Shown here piece after piece: positions 884 through 23,019 of a stretch of 23,019 nucleotides of DNA; position 1 is the first letter of the stretch, and each line of letters opens with the position of its first letter. The stretch lies in contig NW_021836685.1 of the NCBI RefSeq assembly GCF_006345805.1, forward strand, positions 1 through 23,019, in the 5' to 3' direction. The stretch comes from Octopus sinensis. Its lineage: Eukaryota. The position numbers and the translations under genes are program-made. Under the pieces are notes generated by a model. The model was not told the DNA's origin. It ran no database searches and saw nothing but the letters and a program-made list of their open reading frames with translations.

Positions 884-922
<39 letters not shown>

Positions 923-1133
923 ATTTGTGCTTGTGTTCGTCTCCCGCCAACACTTGATGACCTGTTTTGATTTGGTTACGACTTTGTAACTTAGTGGTTC
1001 GGTCAAAGATATCGATAGAATAAGTATCATGCTTAAACATGTTAAAGTGTTGAGGGCGATTTGCTCGACTAGATCCTATAAAGTGGTGCTCAAGCATGGC
1101 CGTAGTCCAATGATTGAAACAAGTATAAGATAA
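537..1133 (+). mobile_element. SINE group A (tRNA-derived, octopod type), old diverged copy split by CA/GT microsatellites
   Basis: 537-700 aligns by eye to the head of the intact copy at 15298 (gggttcagttccactgcgttgcaccttg); 921-1133 aligns to its tail (gatttgctcgacta...gtggtgctcaagcatggccgtagtccaatgattgaaacaagt). Confidence 0.8.
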
Positions 1134-5788: not shown

Positions 5789-6190
5789 ATTCATATATAC
5801 AGTATAACTCTGGACTTCAAGATTGCGAAGAGAACGTCTTAACTGTTCGCACATGCTGCATCCAAATACATACGTACATATGTATATACAAAGATACGTA
5901 CATACATACAAACACACATACATACATACATACATACATACATACATACATACATAACATACATACCTACATACATACATACATACATTCATACTTACAT
6001 ACGTACATACATACGTACATGCATACATATATACATACATGCATACATATATATACGCTATATTCATACATGCATACATTTGTATATACACACATACAGT
6101 GCATGCATACATACATGCATATATACATACATACATACATACATACATACATACATACATACATACATACATAATACATACTTATACACA
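5701..6190. repeat. (CA)n plus compound (CATA)n microsatellite
   Basis: Direct reading: (CA)n about 5701-5783, (CATA)n mosaic about 5866-6190. Confidence 0.95.
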
Positions 6191-6196
6191 TGCATA

Positions 6197-6521
6197 GGAG
6201 CACTCCGTCGGTTGCGACGACGTGGGTCCCAACTAATACGATCAACGGAACAGCTGGCTCGTGAAATTCACGTGTTGGTGGCTGAGCACTCCACAAACAC
6301 GTGTACCCTTAACGTAGTTCTCGGGGAGATTCAGCGTGACACAGTGTGCGACAAGGCCGGCCCTTTGAAATACAAGTACTACTCATTTTTGCCAGCTGAG
6401 TGGACTGGAGCAACGTAAAATAAAGTGTCTTGCTCAAGGACAGAACGCGCTGCCGGGAATTGAACTCCTAACCTTACGATCATAAGCCGAATGCCCCTAA
6501 CCACTAAGCCACACGCCTTCA
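6197..6521 (-). mobile_element. SINE group C (tRNA head, CORE-like middle, shared tail), full-length
   Basis: Minus strand: A box tggcttagtgg, B box gagttcaattccc, CORE-like tccttgagcaagacactttattttacgttgctccagtccactcagctg, tail tgtcacgctgaatctccccgagaactacgttaagggtacacgtg...ccgacggagtgc. Resembles the octopus OR-type SINEs (from memory). Confidence 0.9.
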
Positions 6522-6609: not shown

Positions 6610-6797
6610 ATAACAATTTCTTACATAGGCAGAAACCTCAAATTTTGTGGGGGAAAGAAACGGTCAACACTACCGACTCTAGTACTTGGCTGCTGTTTTA
6701 TTTCATCGACCCTGGAAGGATGAAAGGTATAGCTGACTTTGGTAGGATTTGACCTTAGACCGTAAAGTGTCAGAATAAATACCATCAGGTATTTTAT
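6610..6797 (-). mobile_element. SINE group B, old diverged copy
   Basis: Reverse complement contains cctttcatccttccagggtcgatgaaataaaa and the tail aaaatttgagg, matching group B copies at 11743-11910 and 12007-12204. Confidence 0.75.
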
Positions 6798-7241: not shown

Positions 7242-7247
7242 TTTATT
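7242..7247 (-). promoter_or_regulatory. Candidate polyadenylation signal AATAAA
   Basis: AATAAA on the minus strand about 300 nt after the candidate stop codons, followed about 20 nt later by GU/U-rich gtgtttctt; the hexamer is common in AT-rich DNA. Confidence 0.3.
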
Positions 7248-7350
7248 GCCAACCAACCGTCTTCGCTATGGGCACCCATTAGAGTAAACTAACCGTTCTT
7301 TCTTGCCAAAGACGGTGGGTAGATCTTCAAGATAATCTGGACTATTATTT

Positions 7351-7515
7351 GAATCAATCCTGATGACGATGACAGTTATTATTATTATTATTATTATTGT
7401 TGTTGTTGTTGTTGTTTTGTTGTTGTTGTTGTTTTGTTGTTGTTTGTTGTTACGATGTTGATGAGATGTTATTGTTGTTGCTGTTGTTTTGATGATGATG
7501 ATGATGATGATGATG
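7351..7515. repeat. Compound (ATT)n/(GTT)n/(GAT)n microsatellite
   Basis: Direct reading. Confidence 0.9.
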
Positions 7516-7549
7516 GCGGCATGTTCAGTAACCAGCATCGAGATTGTTA

Positions 7550-7612
7550 TCAAGCGAATTTGGAGTAAACGAAACGAGCGATTTGACTTGAATTGGATAG
7601 CGCCATGAAAGC
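7550..7612 (-). CDS. Candidate terminal coding exon of an unidentified gene (AFMALSNSSQIARFVYSKFA*; alternative frame xLSWRYPIQVKSLVSFTPNSLDNNLDAGY* ending at 7525)
   Basis: Good acceptor ctccgtatttcttgcag|G at 7613/7612; an island of complex sequence between two microsatellite mosaics; both frames stay open when joined to 13891-13926. No protein recognised. Confidence 0.4.
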   Translation of the reverse strand, partial: AFMALSNSSQIARFVYSKFA

Positions 7613-7659
7613 CTGCAAGAAATACGGAGAACCCCCCACCCCCCACCCCTCACCCCGCT

Positions 7660-7990
7660 CCACGACGACGACGACGACCACCACCACCACCACCACTGCC
7701 GCCACCGCCGCCATCACCACCATCACAAGTACAACTACCAAGAACAACGTCACCACCACCACCACCACCATCATCACAAGAACAACCACCAAGGACAACG
7801 TCACCACAACCACCACTACCACCATCGCCATCATAGTTACTACGACTACTACAACTACTGCTACTGCTGCTGATAATGATGATAAGGATAGTGAATGATG
7901 ATACTGGTGATGATGATGATGATGATGACAACGTCGACGACGATAACGCTGATAATGACGACGACGACGACGACGATGACGATATGATGC
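7660..7990. repeat. Compound (CAC)n/(GAC)n/(ACT)n/(GAT)n trinucleotide mosaic
   Basis: Direct reading; source of the four overlapping low-complexity ORFs at 7550-8030. Confidence 0.9.
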
Positions 7991-8485
7991 CACCAGTACT
8001 ATAAGCTAAGCAATAAATTATTAAAGGCAATTTCCTTTTATTTTACTCAAACCAATATCCATTGCTACGTTTCGACCCGACCCTTCTAGCTCCTCCTCAT
8101 CCTTCTCTCCTCTTCCCCCCCTCTCTCTCTCCTATTCTTCATAAGACAGAATATTTGGTCCGTCCAGCTTTACTTTTACGCTTTTAATCTTCCATCTTCC
8201 TCGTCCATGTCACTTTATGAGATCGTTTGTTGCTGTTATTATCTGCCTGTCGAGCAAATGTATTCATATTTTATACACATCCCTATCATTTGCTTTATTT
8301 ACAAGTTACTTCAACATTCAAACAACCCATTACAATACTGTCCTCCATGCACGCACTCTGAAAATGCTCGATTCATATGAGTTTTTACGGCTTCCATAGA
8401 TAGACACACATCTCGTTTTCATTTCGAAGTTTTAGTTGGTTCATTTATGCTCAGCCGTAATTTAATTTATCTCTCTCCATCTGTC

Positions 8486-8505
8486 CGTTTGTCTGTCTGT
8501 CTGTG

Positions 8506-8576
<71 letters not shown>

Positions 8577-8612
8577 GACTGTCTGTCTGTCTGTCTGTCT
8601 GTCTGTCGTCTG

Positions 8613-8674
<62 letters not shown>

Positions 8675-8712
8675 GTCTGTTTATATGTCTATCAGTTCCT
8701 CTGTCTGTCAAT
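8486..8712. repeat. Compound (ATCT)n/(GTCT)n tetranucleotide repeat
   Basis: Direct reading. Confidence 0.95.
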
Positions 8713-8824
8713 CTGTCTGCCTGTCTCTGTGTCTCTTTCTCTATATCTCTACACGCATACATACACACAACGCGCAAACGCAAACACACATACACGCTTT
8801 CAACCAAAAGCACAACACACATAC

Positions 8825-8965
8825 ACCAACCAAATGGCTCCGGGTTCAGTCCCACTGCTTGACACCTTGGTGACGTGTCTTTTTCTACTATTGTCTTGGG
8901 CCGACCAAAGAAAGCCTTGTGAGTGGATTTGGTACACGGAAACTGAAAGAAGCAAGCCGTATATA

Positions 8966-9060
<95 letters not shown>

Positions 9061-9596
9061 AATGAAAGAATGGAGTCGAACGAAGATGTTAACAAAATTC
9101 CTTTACTCTCAACATATGTCGTTTACTCCAGATTCGCTTGAGAACAATCTCGATGAACATGCCGCCATCATCATCATCATCATCATCATCAAAACAACAG
9201 CAACAACAATAACATCTCATCAACATCGTAACAACAAACAACAACAACAATAACAACAACAATAATAATAATAATAATAATAATAACTGTCATCGTCATC
9301 AGGATTGATTCAAATAATAGTCCAGATTATCTTGAAGAGCTACCCACCGTCTTACTCTCGACATATGTCAAGAGTAAAGGAATTTTGTTAACATCTTCGT
9401 TCGACTCCATTCTTTCATTTATTCATATACAACACACAAATTTCTGCACATGAACCCGGAGTTTCTACCCTTGGACATGTCGCTTCAACCGTGTTTCTGA
9501 CGTGAATTTGCTACCCTGGTTCGGTTTTCGGTTCAACGAATTTTCCATGCTGACGATAAACATAGGATAATTCATTCACCTATTTATATATATATA

Positions 9597-9660
<64 letters not shown>

Positions 9661-9691
9661 GTGTGTGTGTGTGTTTGTGTATGTGTGTGTA

Positions 9692-9722
<31 letters not shown>

Positions 9723-9956
9723 TTGTGCGTTCGTGTGTGCGTGCGTGTGTGTGTGTGTGTGTGTCTTTTTGTCTCCCCACCATCGATTAACAATTGGTGT
9801 TGGTGTGTTTACGTCTCCGTAACCTAGAAGTTACTTAGATCGCTAGAATAAGTACTAAGTTTGCAAAGAATAAGTCCTGGGGTCGATTTCTTTGACTAAA
9901 GGCAGTGCTCCAGCATGGTCGCAGTCACATGACTGAAACAAATAAAAGAACAGAAT
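8825..9956 (+). mobile_element. SINE group A, split by an insertion in its central (AT)n
   Basis: Head half 8825-8960 (ccgggttcagtcccactgc...gccttgtgagtggatttggtacacggaaactgaaagaagc); tail half about 9760-9956 (taagtcctggggtcgatttc...cagcatggtcgcagtcacatgactgaaacaaataaaagaa). Confidence 0.85.
9058..9580. mobile_element. Palindromic PLE-like remnant carrying a captured inverted copy of 7309-7572
   Basis: 9058-9120 and 9360-9422 are inverted repeats (61/63 match); 9103-9120 and 9352-9369 are direct repeats (17/18); 9119-9353 is the reverse complement of 7309-7572; unique sequence continues to 9580 and is bounded by (AT)n. The structure is directly visible; the PLE identity is inferred. Confidence 0.7.
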
Positions 9957-10025
9957 ATATATACGTATGTGTTTGTGTGTCTGTGTTTGTCCCTCACCAT
10001 CGTTTAACAACCTCTGCGCTGCCCA

Positions 10026-10213
10026 TAGGTATTCCGTTTGTCTTTATGTTCTGAGTTCAAATTCCGCCGAAGTAAACTTAGCCTTTCATCCTTTCGGGAT
10101 CGATTAAATAAGTACCAGTTACGCACTGGGATCGCTGTAATCGACTTAATCCGTTTGTCTGTCCTTGTTTGTACCCTCTATGTTTAGCCCCTTGTGGGCA
10201 ATAAAGAATTAAG
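10026..10213 (+). mobile_element. SINE group B (Meta/MESC-like central domain), 5'-truncated, tail type 1
   Basis: gttctgagttcaaattccgccga...gcctttcatcctttcgggatcgattaaataagtaccagttacgcactggg...aatccgtttgtctgtccttgtttg; preceded by a short group A tail fragment at about 9966-10015. Confidence 0.85.
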
Positions 10214-11094: not shown

Positions 11095-11168
<74 letters not shown>

Positions 11169-11194
11169 GTCTGTCTGTCTGTCTGTCTGTCTGC

Positions 11195-11233
<39 letters not shown>

Positions 11234-11234
11234 G

Positions 11235-11269
<35 letters not shown>

Positions 11270-11351
11270 CCACCACCACCACCACCACCACCACCACCAC
11301 CACCACCACCATCACCATCACCACCACCATCACCATCACCATCACCATCAC

Positions 11352-11383
<32 letters not shown>

Positions 11384-11483
11384 CCACCACCACCACCACC
11401 ACCACCACCACCACCACCACCACCACCACCACCACCACCACCATCACCACCACCATCACCATCACCATCACCATCACCATCAT

Positions 11484-11538
<55 letters not shown>
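11093..11538. repeat. (ATCT)n-(GTCT)n-(CAT/CAC)n-(CAG)n compound microsatellite
   Basis: Direct reading; source of the poly-H, poly-P, poly-G and poly-V ORFs. Confidence 0.95.
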
Positions 11539-11539
<1 letters not shown>

Positions 11540-11742
11540 CGCCGGGTGAAATGCTTAGCGGTATTTCGTCTGCTGTTACGTTCTGAGTTCAAGTTCCGCC
11601 GATGTCGACTTTGTCTTTCATCCTTTCGAAGTCGATAAATTAAATACCAGTTACGCACTGGGGTCGATGTAATCGACTTAATCCGTTTGTCTGTCCTTGT
11701 TTGTTCCCTCTGTGTTTAGCCCTTGTGAGTAGTAAAGAAATA
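11536..11742 (+). mobile_element. SINE group B, tail type 1
   Basis: agcacgccgggtgaaatgcttagcggtatttcgtc...gttctgagttcaagttccgccg...tctttcatcctttcgaagtcgataaat...aatccgtttgtctgtcc. Confidence 0.9.
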
Positions 11743-11910
11743 GGTATTTCGTTTGCCGTTAGGTTTTGAGTTCGAATTCCGCCGAGGTCGACTTTGCCTT
11801 TCATCCTTTGGAGATCGATAAAATTAGTACCAGTTACGTACTGGGGTCGATGTAATCGGCTTAATCCCTTCCCCCCAAATTTGAGGCCTTGTGCTTCCAG
11901 TAGAAAGGAT
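11743..11910 (+). mobile_element. SINE group B, tail type 2, fused head-to-tail to the previous copy
   Basis: ggtatttcgtttgccgtt...gccgaggtcgactttgcctttcatcc...aaatttgaggccttgtgcttccagtagaaaggat followed by (TTC)n to 11995. Confidence 0.9.
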
Positions 11911-12006: not shown

Positions 12007-12202
12007 GGCAGAATCGTTAGCATGCCGGGCAATATGCTTCGCGGTATTTCGCCCGTTGCCACGTCCTGAGTTCAAATTCCGCCGAAGTTGACTTTGCCTT
12101 TCATCCTTTTGGGGTCAATAAATTAAGTACCAGTGAAACACTGGGGTCAATGTAATCGATTTATCCCCACAAATTTCAGGCCTTGTGCTTTTAGTAGAAA
12201 GG

Positions 12203-13890: not shown

Positions 13891-13926
13891 CCTGACACTG
13901 ATCGTGTTATAATGCTCTGGTTTTGT
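13891..13926 (-). CDS. Candidate 36-nt internal exon (TKPEHYNTISVR, or xQNQSIITRSVSx in the other open frame)
   Basis: Acceptor aatggtttttcag| at 13927 and strong donor AGG|gtgagt at 13890; length divisible by 3; two of three frames open. Confidence 0.45.
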
Positions 13927-14089
13927 CTGAAAAACCATTAAATTTAAGACATGCCATTATAGATTTAACGGTATTGTTGGTGGTGGTTATTCAGTTGGTG
14001 TTCGTGGTGCTATTTATTGTGTGTGATGATAATTCTGGGTTGTGGAGGTAATAATAATAGGGATGCCACATGTGCTTGCTGTTGTAGTA

Positions 14090-14275
14090 GTATTGGTAGT
14101 GGTAGTGAGGTGGTGGTGGTGGTGGTGGTGGTGGTGGTGGTGGCGGCGGTAGTGGTAACGGTTGTGAAAATTACGGTCATAATAAGGGGGTTCGGTGCGC
14201 TATTAGTTATGAAAATGATGATGATGATGGTGATGATGATGATGTTGATGATGTTGTTGATGATGGTGAGAATGA

Positions 14276-14307
<32 letters not shown>

Positions 14308-14396
14308 ATGGTGATGGTGATGATGACGATGATGATGAAGAAGAAGATGATGATGATGATGAGGGTCGTGGTGATGATGGTGGTGATGGTGATGAC

Positions 14397-14434
<38 letters not shown>

Positions 14435-14603
14435 GGAGGATGATGATGGAGGTGGTGGTGGTGGTGATGATGATGGTGGTGATGATGGTGATAGTGATAG
14501 TAATGATAACGATGTGATGATATTGACGATAACGACGACGATGATACTGATGATGATGTTGACGACGATAATGATAATGGTGATGGTACTGATGACGATG
14601 ATA

Positions 14604-14669
<66 letters not shown>

Positions 14670-14940
14670 GTGGTGGTAGTAGTACTAATACTGATAGTGC
14701 GTATGATGGCAGGGTTAGTGGAAGTAATGGTGTAATTGAGTGTGTTGGAAAGGATGGTTGAAACGATGATGATGTCTATGATGATGATGATGATGACAAT
14801 GTTGATGATGATGATGATGGTGACGACGACGATGTTGATGATGATGATGATGATGACGATTATGATGATGATGGCGACGACGACGACGGCGACAATGATG
14901 ATGGATGGATGGATGGTTAATGGTAATGGTGGAGGGTGAC
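14090..14940. repeat. About 850-bp (GAT)n/(GGT)n/(GAC)n trinucleotide mosaic
   Basis: Direct reading; source of the poly-M, poly-V and poly-H ORFs at 14017-15059. Confidence 0.95.
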
Positions 14941-15297
14941 GATCGAGATCGAGGAGTTGATAACGATTGAGGTGGGCGGGGTAGGGTTGGGGGTGGAGTG
15001 GAGGTCGAGGATGCGATGCTGGTGAAGATTATAGATATCGTGCTGGCCTGTGATAGCAAGGGTGTGTTAATGATGATCAGACAGAACGTCAGCTCTGACG
15101 TAATCTCCAGTAAGATGACATCTCCGAAATTTTCGACAGCTCGATATGTCTGAGAGAAGTGTTAGCTTGGAGTCAGCTGGTGGTGGTGGTGGTGGTGAGC
15201 GTTGGTGGGAGGCGAGAGTAGGAGGCGAAAGGATTGCTAGGTGTCAGATATGACGCATTGAATGTGCAGAAAGTTGCTAGTTAAATAATAACACCAT

Positions 15298-15469
15298 AGA
15301 CGCAGGAGTGGCTGTGTGGTAAGTAGCTTGCTTACCAACCACATGGTTCTGGTTTCAGTCCCACTGCGTGGCACCTTGGGCAAGTATCTTCTACTATAGC
15401 CTCGAGCCGACTAAAGCCTTGTGAGTGGGTTTGGTAGACGGAAACTGAAAGAAGCTCGTCGTATATATG

Positions 15470-15532
<63 letters not shown>

Positions 15533-15758
15533 GTATGTGTGTGTGTGTATATGTTTGTGTGTCTGTTGTTTGTCACTCCAACATCGCTTGACGACCGATG
15601 CTGGTGTGTTTACGTCCCCGTAACTTACCGGTTTGGCAAAAGAGACCGATAGAATAAGTAGTAGGCTTACAAAGAATAAGGTCTGGGGTCGATTTGCTCG
15701 ACTAAAGGCGGTGCTCCAGCATGGCCGTAGTCAGATGACTGAGACAAGTAAAAGAGTA
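15298..15758 (+). mobile_element. SINE group A, full-length, best-preserved copy
   Basis: A box tggctgtgtgg, B-box-like ggtttcagtccc, gcaccttgggcaagtatcttctactatagcc, central (AT)n/(GTAT)n/(GT)n, tail ending gcggtgctccagcatggccgtagtcagatgactgagacaagtaaaagag. Confidence 0.92.
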
Positions 15759-16610
15759 ATAGGGTAAAAGAGACCATACATCGTAGAATCTTCCGCAGGC
15801 TTTGTGAACTAAATAATGCATTCGTACGTTTGTATGTCACTCAAAAATTTTCGCCATCGAAATTGTGACTACATGAATGGTCGGGAAACTTTTTAAACCA
15901 ATTACTCCAAAGTATATTTATTTACGCCGCCGTTACCCCCTTGATTTGAAAGGAAAACAATTATAGCCTCTTAAGATTCAAAAGGTTTATTGAATCTATA
16001 AATATGGAGAATACAATTATATATATAAAAAGTATAAAACAAATGCAATAAAATAAATTAATATTCTCATTATGAAACAAAAAGATTTTTCTAGAAACAT
16101 TCTTACTTCAAGTTTTGGAGAAATTATGTCATTTCATTTTTGCTACAATTACATCAAAATTGGGGCATTTTGATACCAGAGCAATTTGGATACAGTCTTT
16201 AGGACCCACTCGATTACTCTGCTCTGTTTTTATGTTCATTAGAGTGGAAAATCCCTGTTTGTAAAGGTAGGTTGTTGCAAAAGGCCGCAACTTTCTGACT
16301 GTCTCCCCAGGGCAGAAGAAAAATCTCTGTCGTAATAATAATAGGTTTTTTATAACTTTTTTTCAACAAATTATATTCATCTGGACGGTCGCATCGATGA
16401 TCTACGGACATTTATGTAAGTAAAATACGTAATATGTTGATAGTGAAACATGTATGCGAATAATCCGTATTTTTATTGCTTTTTCTTTTGTCTTGCCCGA
16501 TTACGTTTTGGTTGTTTTGCTAAATTTTCCTTGAGAACACTTCTTAGTGGTAAGACCATAGCGGATCTATTTCAAGCATAAGGGGGTGTCCACTTAGTGG
16601 TTTCCCTCTA

Positions 16611-16748: not shown

Positions 16749-17124
16749 GGGATCAATGACCCAGTGGTAAGAGCAGGGTACTCGCAGTTTGAGGATCACG
16801 GTTTCGATTCCCAGATGGGCGTTGTGAGTGTTTATTGAGCAAAAACACCTAAAGCTCCACGGGGCTCTGACAGGGCGTGGTGGTGAACCCTGCTGTACTC
16901 TTTCACCACAACTTTCTCTCACTCTTTTGTCCTGTTTCTGTTGTACCTGTATTTGAAAGGGCCAGCCTTGTCACACTCTGTGTCACGCTGAATCTCTCCG
17001 AGAACTACGTTAAGGGTACACGTGTCTGTGGAGTGCTCAGCCACTTACACGTTAATTTCTCGAGCAGGTTGTTCCGTTGATCGAATCAACTGGAACACTC
17101 GTCGTCGTAACCGACGGAGTGCCA
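16749..17124 (+). mobile_element. SINE group C variant (tRNA head, different middle, same tail as 6197-6521), inserted in (AT)n
   Basis: ccagtggtaagagc (A-box region), ggtttcgattccc (B box); 16943-17123 matches the reverse complement of 6199-6379; flanked by (AT)n at 16621-16748 and 17131-17150. Confidence 0.88.
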
Positions 17125-17130
17125 TCATTC

Positions 17131-17172
<42 letters not shown>

Positions 17173-18175
17173 ATAAATGTCTATTAATGTTTGTACAGTT
17201 ATAATAAAATCGATTTTACGTTAATCTGATGGGTTCATTAAACTTTTGCAGAGTACGCACCCATACACACGCGTGCATACACACACACGCACACACACAA
17301 AGACACAAAGATACATATACACACATAGACACATACACACATACATGCATACATACAAACACACAATACACATATGAAAGCGGATATTTGTGTTAGATAT
17401 GAGATATATACGTATTCGCTTTTCCGTAGTTGACGTGAAGAACTAACATTTAGGTTCTTACAGAATTGACATCCAGGTTACGTTTTGTCGTTCATTGTCT
17501 GCCAAGTTCTAGGTGGTGTTATTAGATGATGACAAACATTGTTAATATAACAGCATGATTAGAAATGTATTGGTTTCAAGTTTCTAAAGAACTAGACTAC
17601 CAAAGAACTCATCAACTCTAAAACTGGTGACCACATTGGTACTGAATTATACTTTCTTTGTATTCCATTGAAATATTTTCTTTTTTTCATTTCATTGATT
17701 TCTTTTCGAAATATTTAATTAAAACTGATGATGGAGTAATTAAAGCGAATGTGAAGTGATGAAATCAACTAAATTTTATTCAGACAATAGTATCCTGCAA
17801 CAAAACTTTAAACAGAGAACAAAAAAAGAAAAACTATGTAGATGCCAGCGGCAATTATAGGCTTCAGTTATTTAATCTGTTCCCAATCTGCAAAGACTAT
17901 GTCTATCCAATTAACATCACATCTAGTGATTCCGTCTTGAAACCAGCATCTATTGTTTATACTCATCAATTGCTGTCGCAGTCTGCATTTAAATAATCTT
18001 CATCTCCAGACGGTTGAAATCAAGTCACCAGCTACACACTGTGTCAACATAGTAAACATCTACACAGTATATTATTTTAACTAGATGTGATCTAAAACAT
18101 CTGTCTAATAATATCTAATCCATGCATTTGTCTATCAAGTCAGCATATTCTTAACTACACAAAGTTCACTACAGC

Positions 18176-21695: not shown

Positions 21696-21908
21696 GGCAA
21701 CGAGCTGGTAGAATTGTTATTACGCCGAACAAAATGCTTAGCGGCATTTCGTGTGTCTTCACGTTCCGAGTTCAAATTCTCCCGAGATCGACTTTGCCTT
21801 TCATCCTTTCGGGGTCGGCAAAATAAGTACCAGTTGAACACTGGGATCGATGTAATCAACTCACCCCACTCTACCGAAATTGCTGGCCTTGTGCCAAACT
21901 GTAAAACC
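21696..21908 (+). mobile_element. SINE group B, full-length, tail type 3, with 20-bp target-site duplication
   Basis: ggcaacgagctggtagaattgtta...aaaatgcttagcggcatttcg...gagttcaaattc...gcctttcatcctttcggggtcggcaaaataagtaccag; flanked by aatatgaccaactgtgataa (21676-21695) and aatatgatcaactgtgataa (21909-21928). Confidence 0.93.
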
Positions 21909-22953: not shown

Positions 22954-23019
22954 AAGTGTCTTCTACTATAGCCTCGGGCCGAACGAAGCCTTGTGAGTGG
23001 ATTTGGAAGATGGAAACTG
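22954..23019 (+). mobile_element. SINE group A internal fragment, runs off the window end
   Basis: aagtgtcttctactatagcctcgggccgaacgaagccttgtgagtggatttggaagatggaaactg. Confidence 0.85.

What the first reader, a model, noticed from the sequence alone, without database searches (positions are those of the whole stretch)
7309..9353. Intronic sequence complementary to the gene's own candidate last exon/3' UTR: a possible ADAR editing-complementary sequence
Seen: 9119-9353 is the reverse complement of 7309-7572, about 1.5 kb away, with three clear substitutions outside the microsatellites, a 10-nt deletion and microsatellite length differences. If the minus-strand gene model is right, the pre-mRNA can fold a duplex of roughly 230 bp over the last codons, stop codon and proximal 3' UTR. 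Known: coleoid cephalopods recode heavily by A-to-I editing, which needs dsRNA often supplied by intronic complementary sequence. Inference: a retroelement-made insertion that created a locus-specific editing, splicing or 3' end-processing switch.
Basis: inference. Interest (0 to 1): 0.7.

Follow-up and report, generated by a model that had tools for sequence, protein, structure and literature searches.

The report
Young inverted duplication inside a palindrome
A 264-base stretch was copied backwards into the exact centre of a small DNA palindrome 1.5 kb away, so any RNA spanning both copies could fold into a ~230-bp double strand, but nothing here shows a gene, an exon or a specific editing role, and such inverted pairs are common.

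Summary
9119-9353 is the reverse complement of 7309-7572 (230 matches, 5 mismatches, two indels; blastn E 7e-76), and these are the only two copies in the window.

- Copy B sits exactly at the centre of a 2x~66-bp palindrome (9053-9121 / 9359-9432).
- B is bracketed by a 14-17-bp duplication of the palindrome centre, with 3-nt and 2-nt microhomologies at the junctions and no poly(A).

Copy A has no target duplication. So A is the resident source and B is a derived insertion. The most likely origin is a templated fill-in during repair of a break at a fragile palindrome, not retroposition.

If both copies are co-transcribed, in either sense, the minimum-energy fold contains a 227-233-bp duplex (dG -375 to -388 kcal/mol). 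A duplex that long and nearly perfect is a promiscuous hyper-editing substrate, not a site-selective ECS.

The 'last exon' rests on one acceptor-like motif plus 20 open codons. The window has about 36 such motifs per strand. No open frame in the window has a Pfam domain above threshold. No searched frame has a homologue, though three homology searches were in places short of full coverage or power.

Transcription, editing, copy number elsewhere and polymorphism could not be tested, because no DNA of this organism is in the searchable collections. The finding is ordinary and of low interest.

The parts
7309..7572 (.). Copy A, the resident (source) copy of the duplicated segment. It has unique ends (7309-7375, 7517-7572) around (TTA)n/(TTG)n/(GAT)n microsatellites.
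   Evidence: No flanking direct repeat under any boundary model.
7415..7433 (.). 19-nt microsatellite stretch present only in A. It would be a bulge in the RNA duplex.
7526..7535 (.). 10-nt stretch CAGTAACCAG present only in A, flanked by CA/CA. It would be a bulge in the RNA duplex.
9119..9353 (.). Copy B, the derived inverted copy of A (235 bp). Its first 3 nt, TCG, are shared with the palindrome, so the junction has microhomology.
9105..9121 (+). Left copy of the duplicated palindrome centre, ACTCTCAACATATG(TCG). This is a target-site-like duplication of 14-17 bp.
9354..9370 (+). Right copy of the duplicated palindrome centre, ACTCTCGACATATG(TCA). The two copies differ only at CpG positions (CG vs CA).
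9053..9121 (.). Left arm of the palindrome that B interrupts.
   Evidence: I4: 69 nt, 94%; core 9058-9121 has 62/64 matches, and both mismatches fall at one CpG
9359..9432 (.). Right arm of the palindrome.
   Evidence: Joining the flanks gives a spacer-less hairpin with a 58-63-bp stem, DNA dG -60.5 kcal/mol, z -19.8.
7550..7632 (-). This is chance-level evidence for an exon.
   Evidence: 36 comparable motifs on this strand; no homologue, no domain above threshold
7242..7247 (-). Nearest minus-strand AATAAA, 62 nt beyond the end of A. B is therefore not a copy of a polyadenylated 3' end.

Best explanation
A short, spacer-less palindrome of about 2x66 bp (centre ACTCTCGACATATGTCGAGAGT) stood at about 9053-9432. 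It broke at or near its centre. The break was repaired by copying 233-235 bp from a template 1.55 kb away on the same chromosome (7309-7572) in inverted orientation. Synthesis was primed at a TCG microhomology and rejoined at a TT microhomology, and the two broken ends overlapped by 14-17 bp, which is the 'target-site duplication'. This is a templated (filler) insertion of the MMBIR, synthesis-dependent end-joining or gap-repair kind.

The result is a young local inverted duplication. It has most likely no selected function. Its one predictable consequence is that any RNA spanning 7309-9353, in either sense, can fold into three helices of about 108, 94 and 37 bp separated by two bulges. In an animal with active ADARs such a duplex would be promiscuously hyper-edited, and possibly diced or retained in the nucleus. 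That is generic inverted-repeat behaviour, not a site-specific ECS.

Shown: the duplication, its polarity, the palindrome, the duplicated centre, the microhomologies and the folding potential. Inferred: the repair mechanism. Untested: transcription, editing and any effect on a gene.
For: - Inverted copies at 97.9% identity, only two in the window.
- B lies exactly between two copies of the palindrome centre, and the reconstructed empty site is a near-perfect hairpin.
- A has no flanking duplication, so it is the source.
- Junction microhomologies are TCG and TT. There is no poly(A), and the copy ends 62 nt before the nearest AATAAA.
- Source and target are 1.5 kb apart. That is expected for cis template switching and very unlikely for retroposition into a large genome (inference).
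- Palindromes and non-spaced inverted repeats are break-prone and are stabilised by central rearrangement (PMC3300023, which cites the centre-break mechanism; PMC4245961).
- Inverted templated insertions flanked by microhomology are the MMBIR signature and occur in the germline (PMC8421209).
- The A:B duplex dominates the MFE in both senses, with 227-233 bp and dG -375 to -388 kcal/mol.
- Hyper-editing is mostly at neighbouring inverted repeats, and octopus has an exceptionally high density of loci able to form long, near-perfect dsRNA (PMC5625713).
- All differences between the two duplicated centres, and between the palindrome arms, are CpG to CpA/TpG. This fits ordinary decay after the event.
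Against: - Described MMBIR templated insertions are usually shorter, with templates within about 100 bp (PMC8421209). Here 233 bp was copied from 1.55 kb away.
- A 14-17-bp duplication is also the hallmark of LINE-type target-primed insertion.
- Because the target is a palindrome, a direct duplication of its centre cannot be told apart from palindromic (P-type) additions at opened hairpin ends, so the exact break geometry is not determined.
- Whether A/B or the palindrome belong to dispersed families could not be checked. No DNA of this organism is in the searchable collections: a control repeat present 4 times in the window is also absent.
- The organism was never identified here. The ADAR argument assumes a cephalopod, or at least a metazoan.
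Confidence: 0.6

Rival explanations
1. A lies in the last exon and 3' UTR of a minus-strand gene and B lies in its last intron. The pre-mRNA duplex recruits ADAR and acts as a locus-specific switch for editing, splicing or 3'-end processing. It could, for example, edit the UGA at 7552-7550, or serve as an 'editing inducer element'.
For: The duplex potential is real. An acceptor-like motif and a 20-codon frame ending in TGA exist at 7612-7550, and an AATAAA lies downstream at 7247. Long intronic duplexes can boost editing at nearby sites (PMC3479170, title and abstract). If the organism is a coleoid, editing is pervasive and is enriched in 3' UTRs (PMC9068888).
Against: The acceptor plus short frame is at chance level: 36 such motifs on this strand, about 80% with at least 20 open codons. 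No homologue was found for this frame or for any other searched open frame in the window, and no Pfam domain reaches threshold; a 20-residue exact match is near the detection limit of that search. The surrounding 'coding' frames are microsatellite translations. A plus-strand reading is equally (un)convincing: ATG 7605, stop 7898, AATAAA 8012. The duplex is long and nearly perfect, which predicts promiscuous rather than selective editing. On a minus-strand RNA, B is transcribed between the palindrome arms. These can form a local ~68-bp stem (dG about -104 kcal/mol) before A exists, and that stem is topologically exclusive with A:B in a nested fold. The copy is young, so it is not a conserved ECS.
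Confidence: 0.07
2. B is a retrocopy. A fragment of a local transcript containing A was reverse-transcribed by a LINE enzyme (target-primed reverse transcription, TPRT), or was used as an RNA template for break repair, and was inserted with a 14-17-bp target-site duplication.
For: The length of the target-site duplication is typical of non-LTR retrotransposition (established knowledge). Class-2 templated-sequence insertions without poly(A) have been described (my own knowledge, not checked here).
Against: There is no poly(A) or microsatellite tail at either end. The copy does not reach a polyadenylation site. No A-rich nick-site motif lies at the junction. Insertion 1.5 kb from the source is not expected for retroposition. 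The junctions show microhomology to the target.
Confidence: 0.13
3. A and B, and/or the palindrome, are members of dispersed mobile families. The palindrome could be a foldback or MITE-type element, or a Pack-type TIR element that captured a host fragment. The inverted pair would then be a by-product of transposition, with B plus the arms forming one mobile unit.
For: The palindrome has 64-69-bp terminal inverted arms at 97% identity, abuts a (TA)n tract and lies between SINE-like pieces. The window is saturated with interspersed repeats. Palindromic MITEs are heavily edited elsewhere, for example Xenopus Harbinger (PMC5625713).
Against: Only one palindrome and two A-type copies are in 23 kb. 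A lacks both TIRs and a TSD. The duplicated palindrome centre on both sides of B shows that B entered an already complete palindrome. No known cut-and-paste superfamily makes 14-17-bp TSDs (established knowledge).
Confidence: 0.17
4. Assembly artefact. A chimeric or fold-back read created a false inverted copy.
For: Microsatellite-rich, palindromic DNA is hard to assemble (general knowledge).
Against: The two copies differ by 5 substitutions and 2 indels. B has clean junctions with a duplicated target and CpG-type decay. These are signs of a real, aged event, and artefactual fold-backs give perfect, read-scale palindromes.
Confidence: 0.03

Closest known systems
Neighbouring inverted repeats as ADAR hyper-editing substrates (inverted Alu pairs in primates; inverted repeats in octopus and other Metazoa; PMC5625713)
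   Same: Two oppositely oriented, nearly identical copies lie within a few kb and are predicted to form a duplex of more than 200 bp on one transcript. This is the structure associated with clustered, promiscuous A-to-I editing.
   Different: The copies here are not members of a dispersed repeat family, as far as the window shows, but a one-off local duplication. Transcription and editing are untested.
Site-selective editing complementary sequences (GluA2 Q/R and R/G intronic ECS; Drosophila ECSs; PMC5705066, PMC1920255)
   Same: A sequence complementary to a putative exon is placed in a putative intron.
   Different: Classical ECS duplexes are short, imperfect and conserved, and they flank a known recoding site. 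Here exon status is unsupported, the duplex is about 230 bp and nearly perfect, and the copy is only 2.1% diverged.
Microhomology-mediated templated insertions (MMBIR / synthesis-dependent MMEJ; PMC8421209, PMC2943611, PMC5728401)
   Same: An inverted copy of a nearby template, inserted at a break, with 2-3 nt of microhomology at both junctions.
   Different: The insert is much longer (233 bp) and the template is farther away (1.55 kb) than in the typical described events (10-100 bp, template within 100 bp).
Centre-break revision of palindromes / fragility of non-spaced inverted repeats (PMC3300023 and the Cunningham et al. 2003 paper it cites; PMC4245961)
   Same: The rearrangement sits exactly at the symmetry centre of a spacer-less palindrome and converts it into a spaced, more stable inverted repeat.
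   Different: Described revisions are mostly small central deletions or insertions in transgenes or model systems. Here the filler is a 233-bp templated copy in a natural genome.
LINE-mediated retrocopies / SINE-like insertions
   Same: Variable-length 14-17-bp target-site duplication around a short non-coding insert.
   Different: No 3' tail, no endonuclease-type target motif, and insertion next to the source.

Membership tests
Site-selective ADAR ECS | The complementary partner is a real exon carrying an edited site | tested here: inconclusive
   No support for an exon. The acceptor plus 20 codons is at chance level, no homologue was found and no domain reaches threshold. Absence of a transcript cannot be shown from DNA.
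Site-selective ADAR ECS | A short, imperfect duplex that confers site selectivity | tested here: not met
   Helices of about 108, 94 and 37 bp with 5 mismatches in total, dG -375 to -388 kcal/mol.
Site-selective ADAR ECS | Evolutionary conservation of the ECS and its target | not testable with these tools
   No related genomes are reachable. The 2.1% divergence, against 13-27% for the window's SINE copies, argues that the element is recent.
Site-selective ADAR ECS | A-to-G RNA/DNA differences at the paired region | not testable with these tools
   No RNA data available.
Inverted-repeat hyper-editing substrate | Two inverted, highly similar copies within a few kb | tested here: met
   97.9% identity with 1546 nt between the arms.
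Inverted-repeat hyper-editing substrate | A long, nearly perfect intramolecular duplex in the predicted fold | tested here: met
   227-232 A:B pairs in the MFE of 7250-9480 in both senses.
Inverted-repeat hyper-editing substrate | Both arms on one transcript, with clustered A-to-G mismatches | not testable with these tools
   No RNA data available.
LINE-mediated retrocopy | Target-site duplication of variable length (about 7-20 bp) | tested here: met
   14-17 bp, ACTCTC[A/G]ACATATG(TCG/TCA).
LINE-mediated retrocopy | 3' poly(A) or LINE-type 3' tail at one end | tested here: not met
   The ends read ...CCCACCGTCTT|ACTCTC and CATATG|TCGTTTACTCC. There is no A-run or tail.
Templated insertion by break repair (MMBIR / SD-MMEJ) | The insert is a copy of a nearby cis template, often inverted | tested here: met
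   The template is 1.55 kb away in inverted orientation.
Templated insertion by break repair (MMBIR / SD-MMEJ) | Microhomology at both junctions | tested here: met
   TCG at the left junction and TT at the right.
MITE / foldback element (for the palindrome) | Terminal inverted repeats | tested here: met
   Arms 9058-9121 and 9359-9422 match at 62/64 positions.
MITE / foldback element (for the palindrome) | Multiple dispersed copies with their own TSDs | not testable with these tools
   One copy in the window; no genome of this organism is reachable.

The most novel reading that the evidence does not exclude
The locus is transcribed through both arms in neural tissue. The recently created 230-bp duplex then acts as a lineage- or population-specific ADAR-recruiting element (an 'editing inducer'), or as a source of endo-siRNA or nuclear retention, and so changes editing, 3'-end choice or abundance of a host transcript. 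This would be a datable natural experiment in which a break-repair accident at a palindrome creates a new RNA-level regulatory structure.
Probability: 0.05. Interest if true: 0.55.

Novelty: new member of a known kind. Interest (0 to 1): 0.2.

Why it matters
As it stands, it matters little. Local inverted duplicates that can form long dsRNA are a known and abundant class, especially in octopus-like genomes (PMC5625713). No gene is demonstrably involved here.

Two modest points of value remain:
1. The locus is an unusually clean natural example of a long (233-bp) templated inverted insertion at the exact centre of a spacer-less palindrome. The source, target, overlap and microhomologies are all still legible. 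This bears on how palindromes are stabilised and how new inverted repeats, and hence new dsRNA sources, arise.
2. If the insert turns out to be polymorphic and the region transcribed, the filled and empty alleles would give a direct in-vivo test of what one new 230-bp duplex does to editing and RNA processing.

Tried and rejected
(1) Looking for the gene.
- I took six-frame open frames of at least 40 aa, filtered for low complexity, and scanned them against Pfam. There were no hits.
- The longer frames that the filter had dropped were scanned separately. Only sub-threshold, composition-driven hits appeared, for example Promethin at 26.8 bits against a cut-off of 27 for a poly-Val frame.
- Three searches of 5.8 billion proteins found nothing.
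- Three caveats apply. A 20-aa exact match is near the detection limit. Exons shorter than 40 aa were not tested. The frames dropped by the complexity filter were scanned against Pfam only.

(2) Fetching the same locus or other DNA of this organism.
- Exact-product look-ups for three window ORFs found nothing on record.
- Exact-pattern scans for a unique 24-mer from the left end of A (metagenome contigs) and for a 30-mer from a palindrome arm (viral contigs) gave 0 hits.
- A control pattern from a SINE-like repeat present 4 times in the window is also absent from the metagenome, viral and prokaryotic collections. These negatives therefore say nothing about copy number.

(3) Identifying the organism.
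- Rfam and tRNA scans were empty.
- Repeat-sequence strings were not found in the literature.
- The only protein-level anchor is a hAT/FAM200C-like remnant at 16132-16362 (-).
- My recollection that the interspersed repeats look like octopus SINEs is a lead from memory, not a test.

(4) Other readings considered and rejected.
- A as an insertion: rejected, because no TSD appears under full-length or truncated models.
- B as a retrocopy of a hyper-edited RNA: rejected, because only 1 of 5 differences is A-to-G in the minus sense.
- An 8-nt inverted repeat at A's left boundary (7256-7263 / 7309-7316) as the reason the copy ends there: too weak to argue.
Full report
OBSERVATION

The inverted repeat is real and far beyond chance. 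The repeat finder reports arms 7309-7416/9246-9353 (108 nt, 97%) and 7434-7527/9154-9247 (94 nt, 100%). blastn joins them into 7309-7572 against 9353-9119 with E 6.6e-76, and every other hit of either copy in the window is a microsatellite match.

A global alignment gives 230 matches and 5 mismatches. The mismatches are at 7323, 7399, 7411, 7549 and 7560. Two stretches are present only in copy A: 19 nt of (TTG)n at 7415-7433, and CAGTAACCAG at 7526-7535.

At 97.9% identity, the pair is by far the youngest duplicate in a window whose other interspersed repeats are 73-87% identical.

Copy B is not lying in anonymous DNA. It splits a palindrome. Arms 9053-9121 and 9359-9427 are 94% complementary over 69 nt. 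The core 9058-9121 matches the reverse complement of the right arm at 62 of 64 positions, and both mismatches fall on one CpG.

B is bracketed by a direct duplication of the palindrome's centre:
- ACTCTCAACATATG(TCG) at 9105-9121
- ACTCTCGACATATG(TCA) at 9354-9370

The differences between these two copies are again CG versus CA.

Joining the flanks gives ...CCTTTACTCTCAACATATGTCGAGAGTAAAGG.... As single-stranded DNA this folds into a spacer-less hairpin with a 58-63-bp stem, dG -60.5 kcal/mol and z -19.8. B is therefore an insertion into a pre-existing complete palindrome.

Copy A has no flanking duplication, whether it is treated as full-length or as the longer partner of a truncated copy. 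A is therefore the resident source.

The junctions carry microhomology:
- Left junction: TCG is shared between the palindrome (CATATGTCG) and the source (GTTTCG|TTTACTCC).
- Right junction: TT is shared.

Neither end has a poly(A) or other tail. On the minus strand the copied segment stops 62 nt short of the nearest AATAAA, at 7247-7242.

HOW THE DUPLICATE MOST LIKELY AROSE (INFERENCE)

Spacer-less palindromes are break-prone, and central rearrangement stabilises them (PMC3300023, which cites the centre-break mechanism; PMC4245961). Inverted copies of nearby templates, inserted with junctional microhomology, are the signature of MMBIR or synthesis-dependent end joining. They occur as germline events (PMC8421209; also PMC2943611, PMC5728401).

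My proposed sequence of events is as follows. A break occurred at the palindrome centre. One end primed on the A region through TCG and copied about 233 nt. The new end then rejoined at TT. The 14-17-bp duplication reflects a staggered break or overlapping resynthesis of the two ends. Because the target is a palindrome, a direct duplication of its centre has the same sequence as palindromic additions at opened hairpins, so the exact break geometry cannot be resolved.

The event is larger, and its template more distant, than typical described MMBIR insertions. That is the main reason my confidence is about 0.6 rather than higher.

A LINE-type retrocopy would explain the length of the duplication. 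It would not explain the missing tail, the microhomologies, or the landing site 1.5 kb from the source.

A mobile-family explanation cannot be excluded. No DNA of this organism is in any searchable collection: a control repeat present four times in the window is absent from the metagenome, viral and prokaryotic contigs. The zero hits for a 24-mer from A and for the palindrome arm are therefore uninformative.

IS THERE A GENE?

Several results argue that this is not evidence of an exon:
- By the same crude criterion, the window has 36 acceptor-like motifs on the minus strand and 37 on the plus strand (1.6 per kb). About 80% are followed by at least 20 open codons in some frame.
- The frame containing those 20 codons runs open straight through the supposed intron as a translation of (GTG)n/(GTC)n microsatellites.
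- No non-low-complexity open frame of 40 aa or more anywhere in the window hits Pfam.
- The longer frames that my complexity filter had dropped give only sub-threshold, composition-driven hits.
- Three searches of 5.8 billion proteins found nothing. They covered the frames around A and the 20-residue tail, repeat-derived frames, and 79 of the remaining frames of 41 aa or longer.
- Exact-product look-ups were also empty.

This shows how little the sequence alone constrains the strand.

Caveats: exons shorter than about 40 aa, lineage-specific genes and non-coding transcripts are invisible to these tests. The dropped frames were scanned against Pfam only. One search used a strict 1e-5 cut-off.

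WHAT THE PAIR WOULD DO IF TRANSCRIBED

The two arms alone cofold into 230-233 intermolecular pairs, with dG -375 kcal/mol in the minus sense and -388 in the plus sense. In the MFE of the whole 7250-9480 RNA, 227-232 A:B pairs form in either sense. The structure is three helices of about 108, 94 and 37 bp, with bulges of 19 and 10 nt on the A side.

The palindrome arms would form a competing local stem around B: about 59-68 bp, with arm-duplex dG -99 to -104 kcal/mol. In a nested fold this stem and the A:B duplex exclude each other. On a minus-strand RNA the local stem is transcribed first.

Long, nearly perfect duplexes are edited promiscuously, not site-selectively (established knowledge). 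Across Metazoa, hyper-editing clusters lie mostly in neighbouring inverted repeats. Octopus has an exceptionally high fraction of loci able to form such duplexes, 4.4e-3 (PMC5625713). In squid, most non-coding edits overlap repeats (PMC9068888). So the pair works like an inverted-repeat hyper-editing substrate, not like a classical ECS (PMC5705066, PMC1920255). A role as an ADAR-recruiting 'inducer' duplex (PMC3479170) is conceivable but unsupported.

The DNA differences between A and B carry no editing signature. Only one of the five is A-to-G in the minus sense.

ORGANISM

I could not identify the source. The Rfam and tRNA scans were empty. The one protein anchor is a hAT/FAM200C-like remnant at 16132-16362 (-), whose closest relatives are unnamed metagenome proteins. 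The microsatellite load and the interspersed repeats remind me of octopus SINEs, but that is memory, not a test.

VERDICT

- The structure is extended: a palindrome, a duplicated centre, junction microhomologies, and a source-to-copy polarity.
- The origin is most likely templated break repair.
- The gene, exon and ECS reading is unsupported, though it cannot be refuted without RNA data.
- The kind is known and common, so interest is low, about 0.2.

Noticed in passing
window 888-1133, 2499-2943, 8825-9031, 9734-9949, 15297-15759, 22954-23019: Copies of one SINE-like interspersed repeat, 73-88% identical, with an internal (TA)n/(TG)n tract. In the 8825-9949 region its two halves are separated by about 700 bp that contain the palindrome, copy B and a unique 150-bp piece (9428-9580). 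This may be nested insertions, or two adjacent partial copies.
   Followed up: partly
window 10025-10208, 11536-11867, 12007-12170, 21707-21898 (and about 6640-6750): A second interspersed repeat family, 76-87% identical, often followed by long trinucleotide runs. A third family lies at 6147-6382 / 16940-17174 in inverted orientation at 84% identity.
   Followed up: no
window 16132-16411 (-): A frameshifted remnant of a hAT-type (FAM200C-like) transposase C-terminus. It is 69-70% identical to unnamed metagenome proteins and 48% identical to a FAM200C-like protein of the mantis shrimp Oratosquilla oratoria. It has no Pfam hit on its own.
   Followed up: partly
window 7605-7898 (+), 8012-8025 (+): An ATG-initiated Thr-rich frame of 97 codons made of (ACC)n-type repeats, followed by AATAAA/ATTAAA 115-125 nt downstream. 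It was not included in the homology searches.
   Followed up: no
window 13900-15150 and 11150-11560: Kilobase-scale blocks of trinucleotide microsatellites. One is G-rich on the plus strand with GC skew up to 0.76. The other is (CAT/CAC/CCA)n. They give long spurious open frames in all reading frames (poly-His, -Pro, -Val, -Met).
   Followed up: no
window 7256-7263 and 7309-7316: An 8-nt inverted repeat (ACCGTCTT / AAGACGGT) sits exactly at the boundary where the copied segment ends. It could be a chance match, or a small hairpin that ended template copying.
   Followed up: no
window 8960-9052 and 9581-9645: Long (TA)n tracts flank the palindrome region. They are self-complementary, and complementary to each other at 88-97% (I6-I25). 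They would add AU-only duplex potential to any transcript.
   Followed up: no
window 7550-7993 (-): A poly-Val/His microsatellite frame scores 26.8 bits against Pfam Promethin (cut-off 27). I judge this a composition artefact of a hydrophobic low-complexity sequence.
   Followed up: partly
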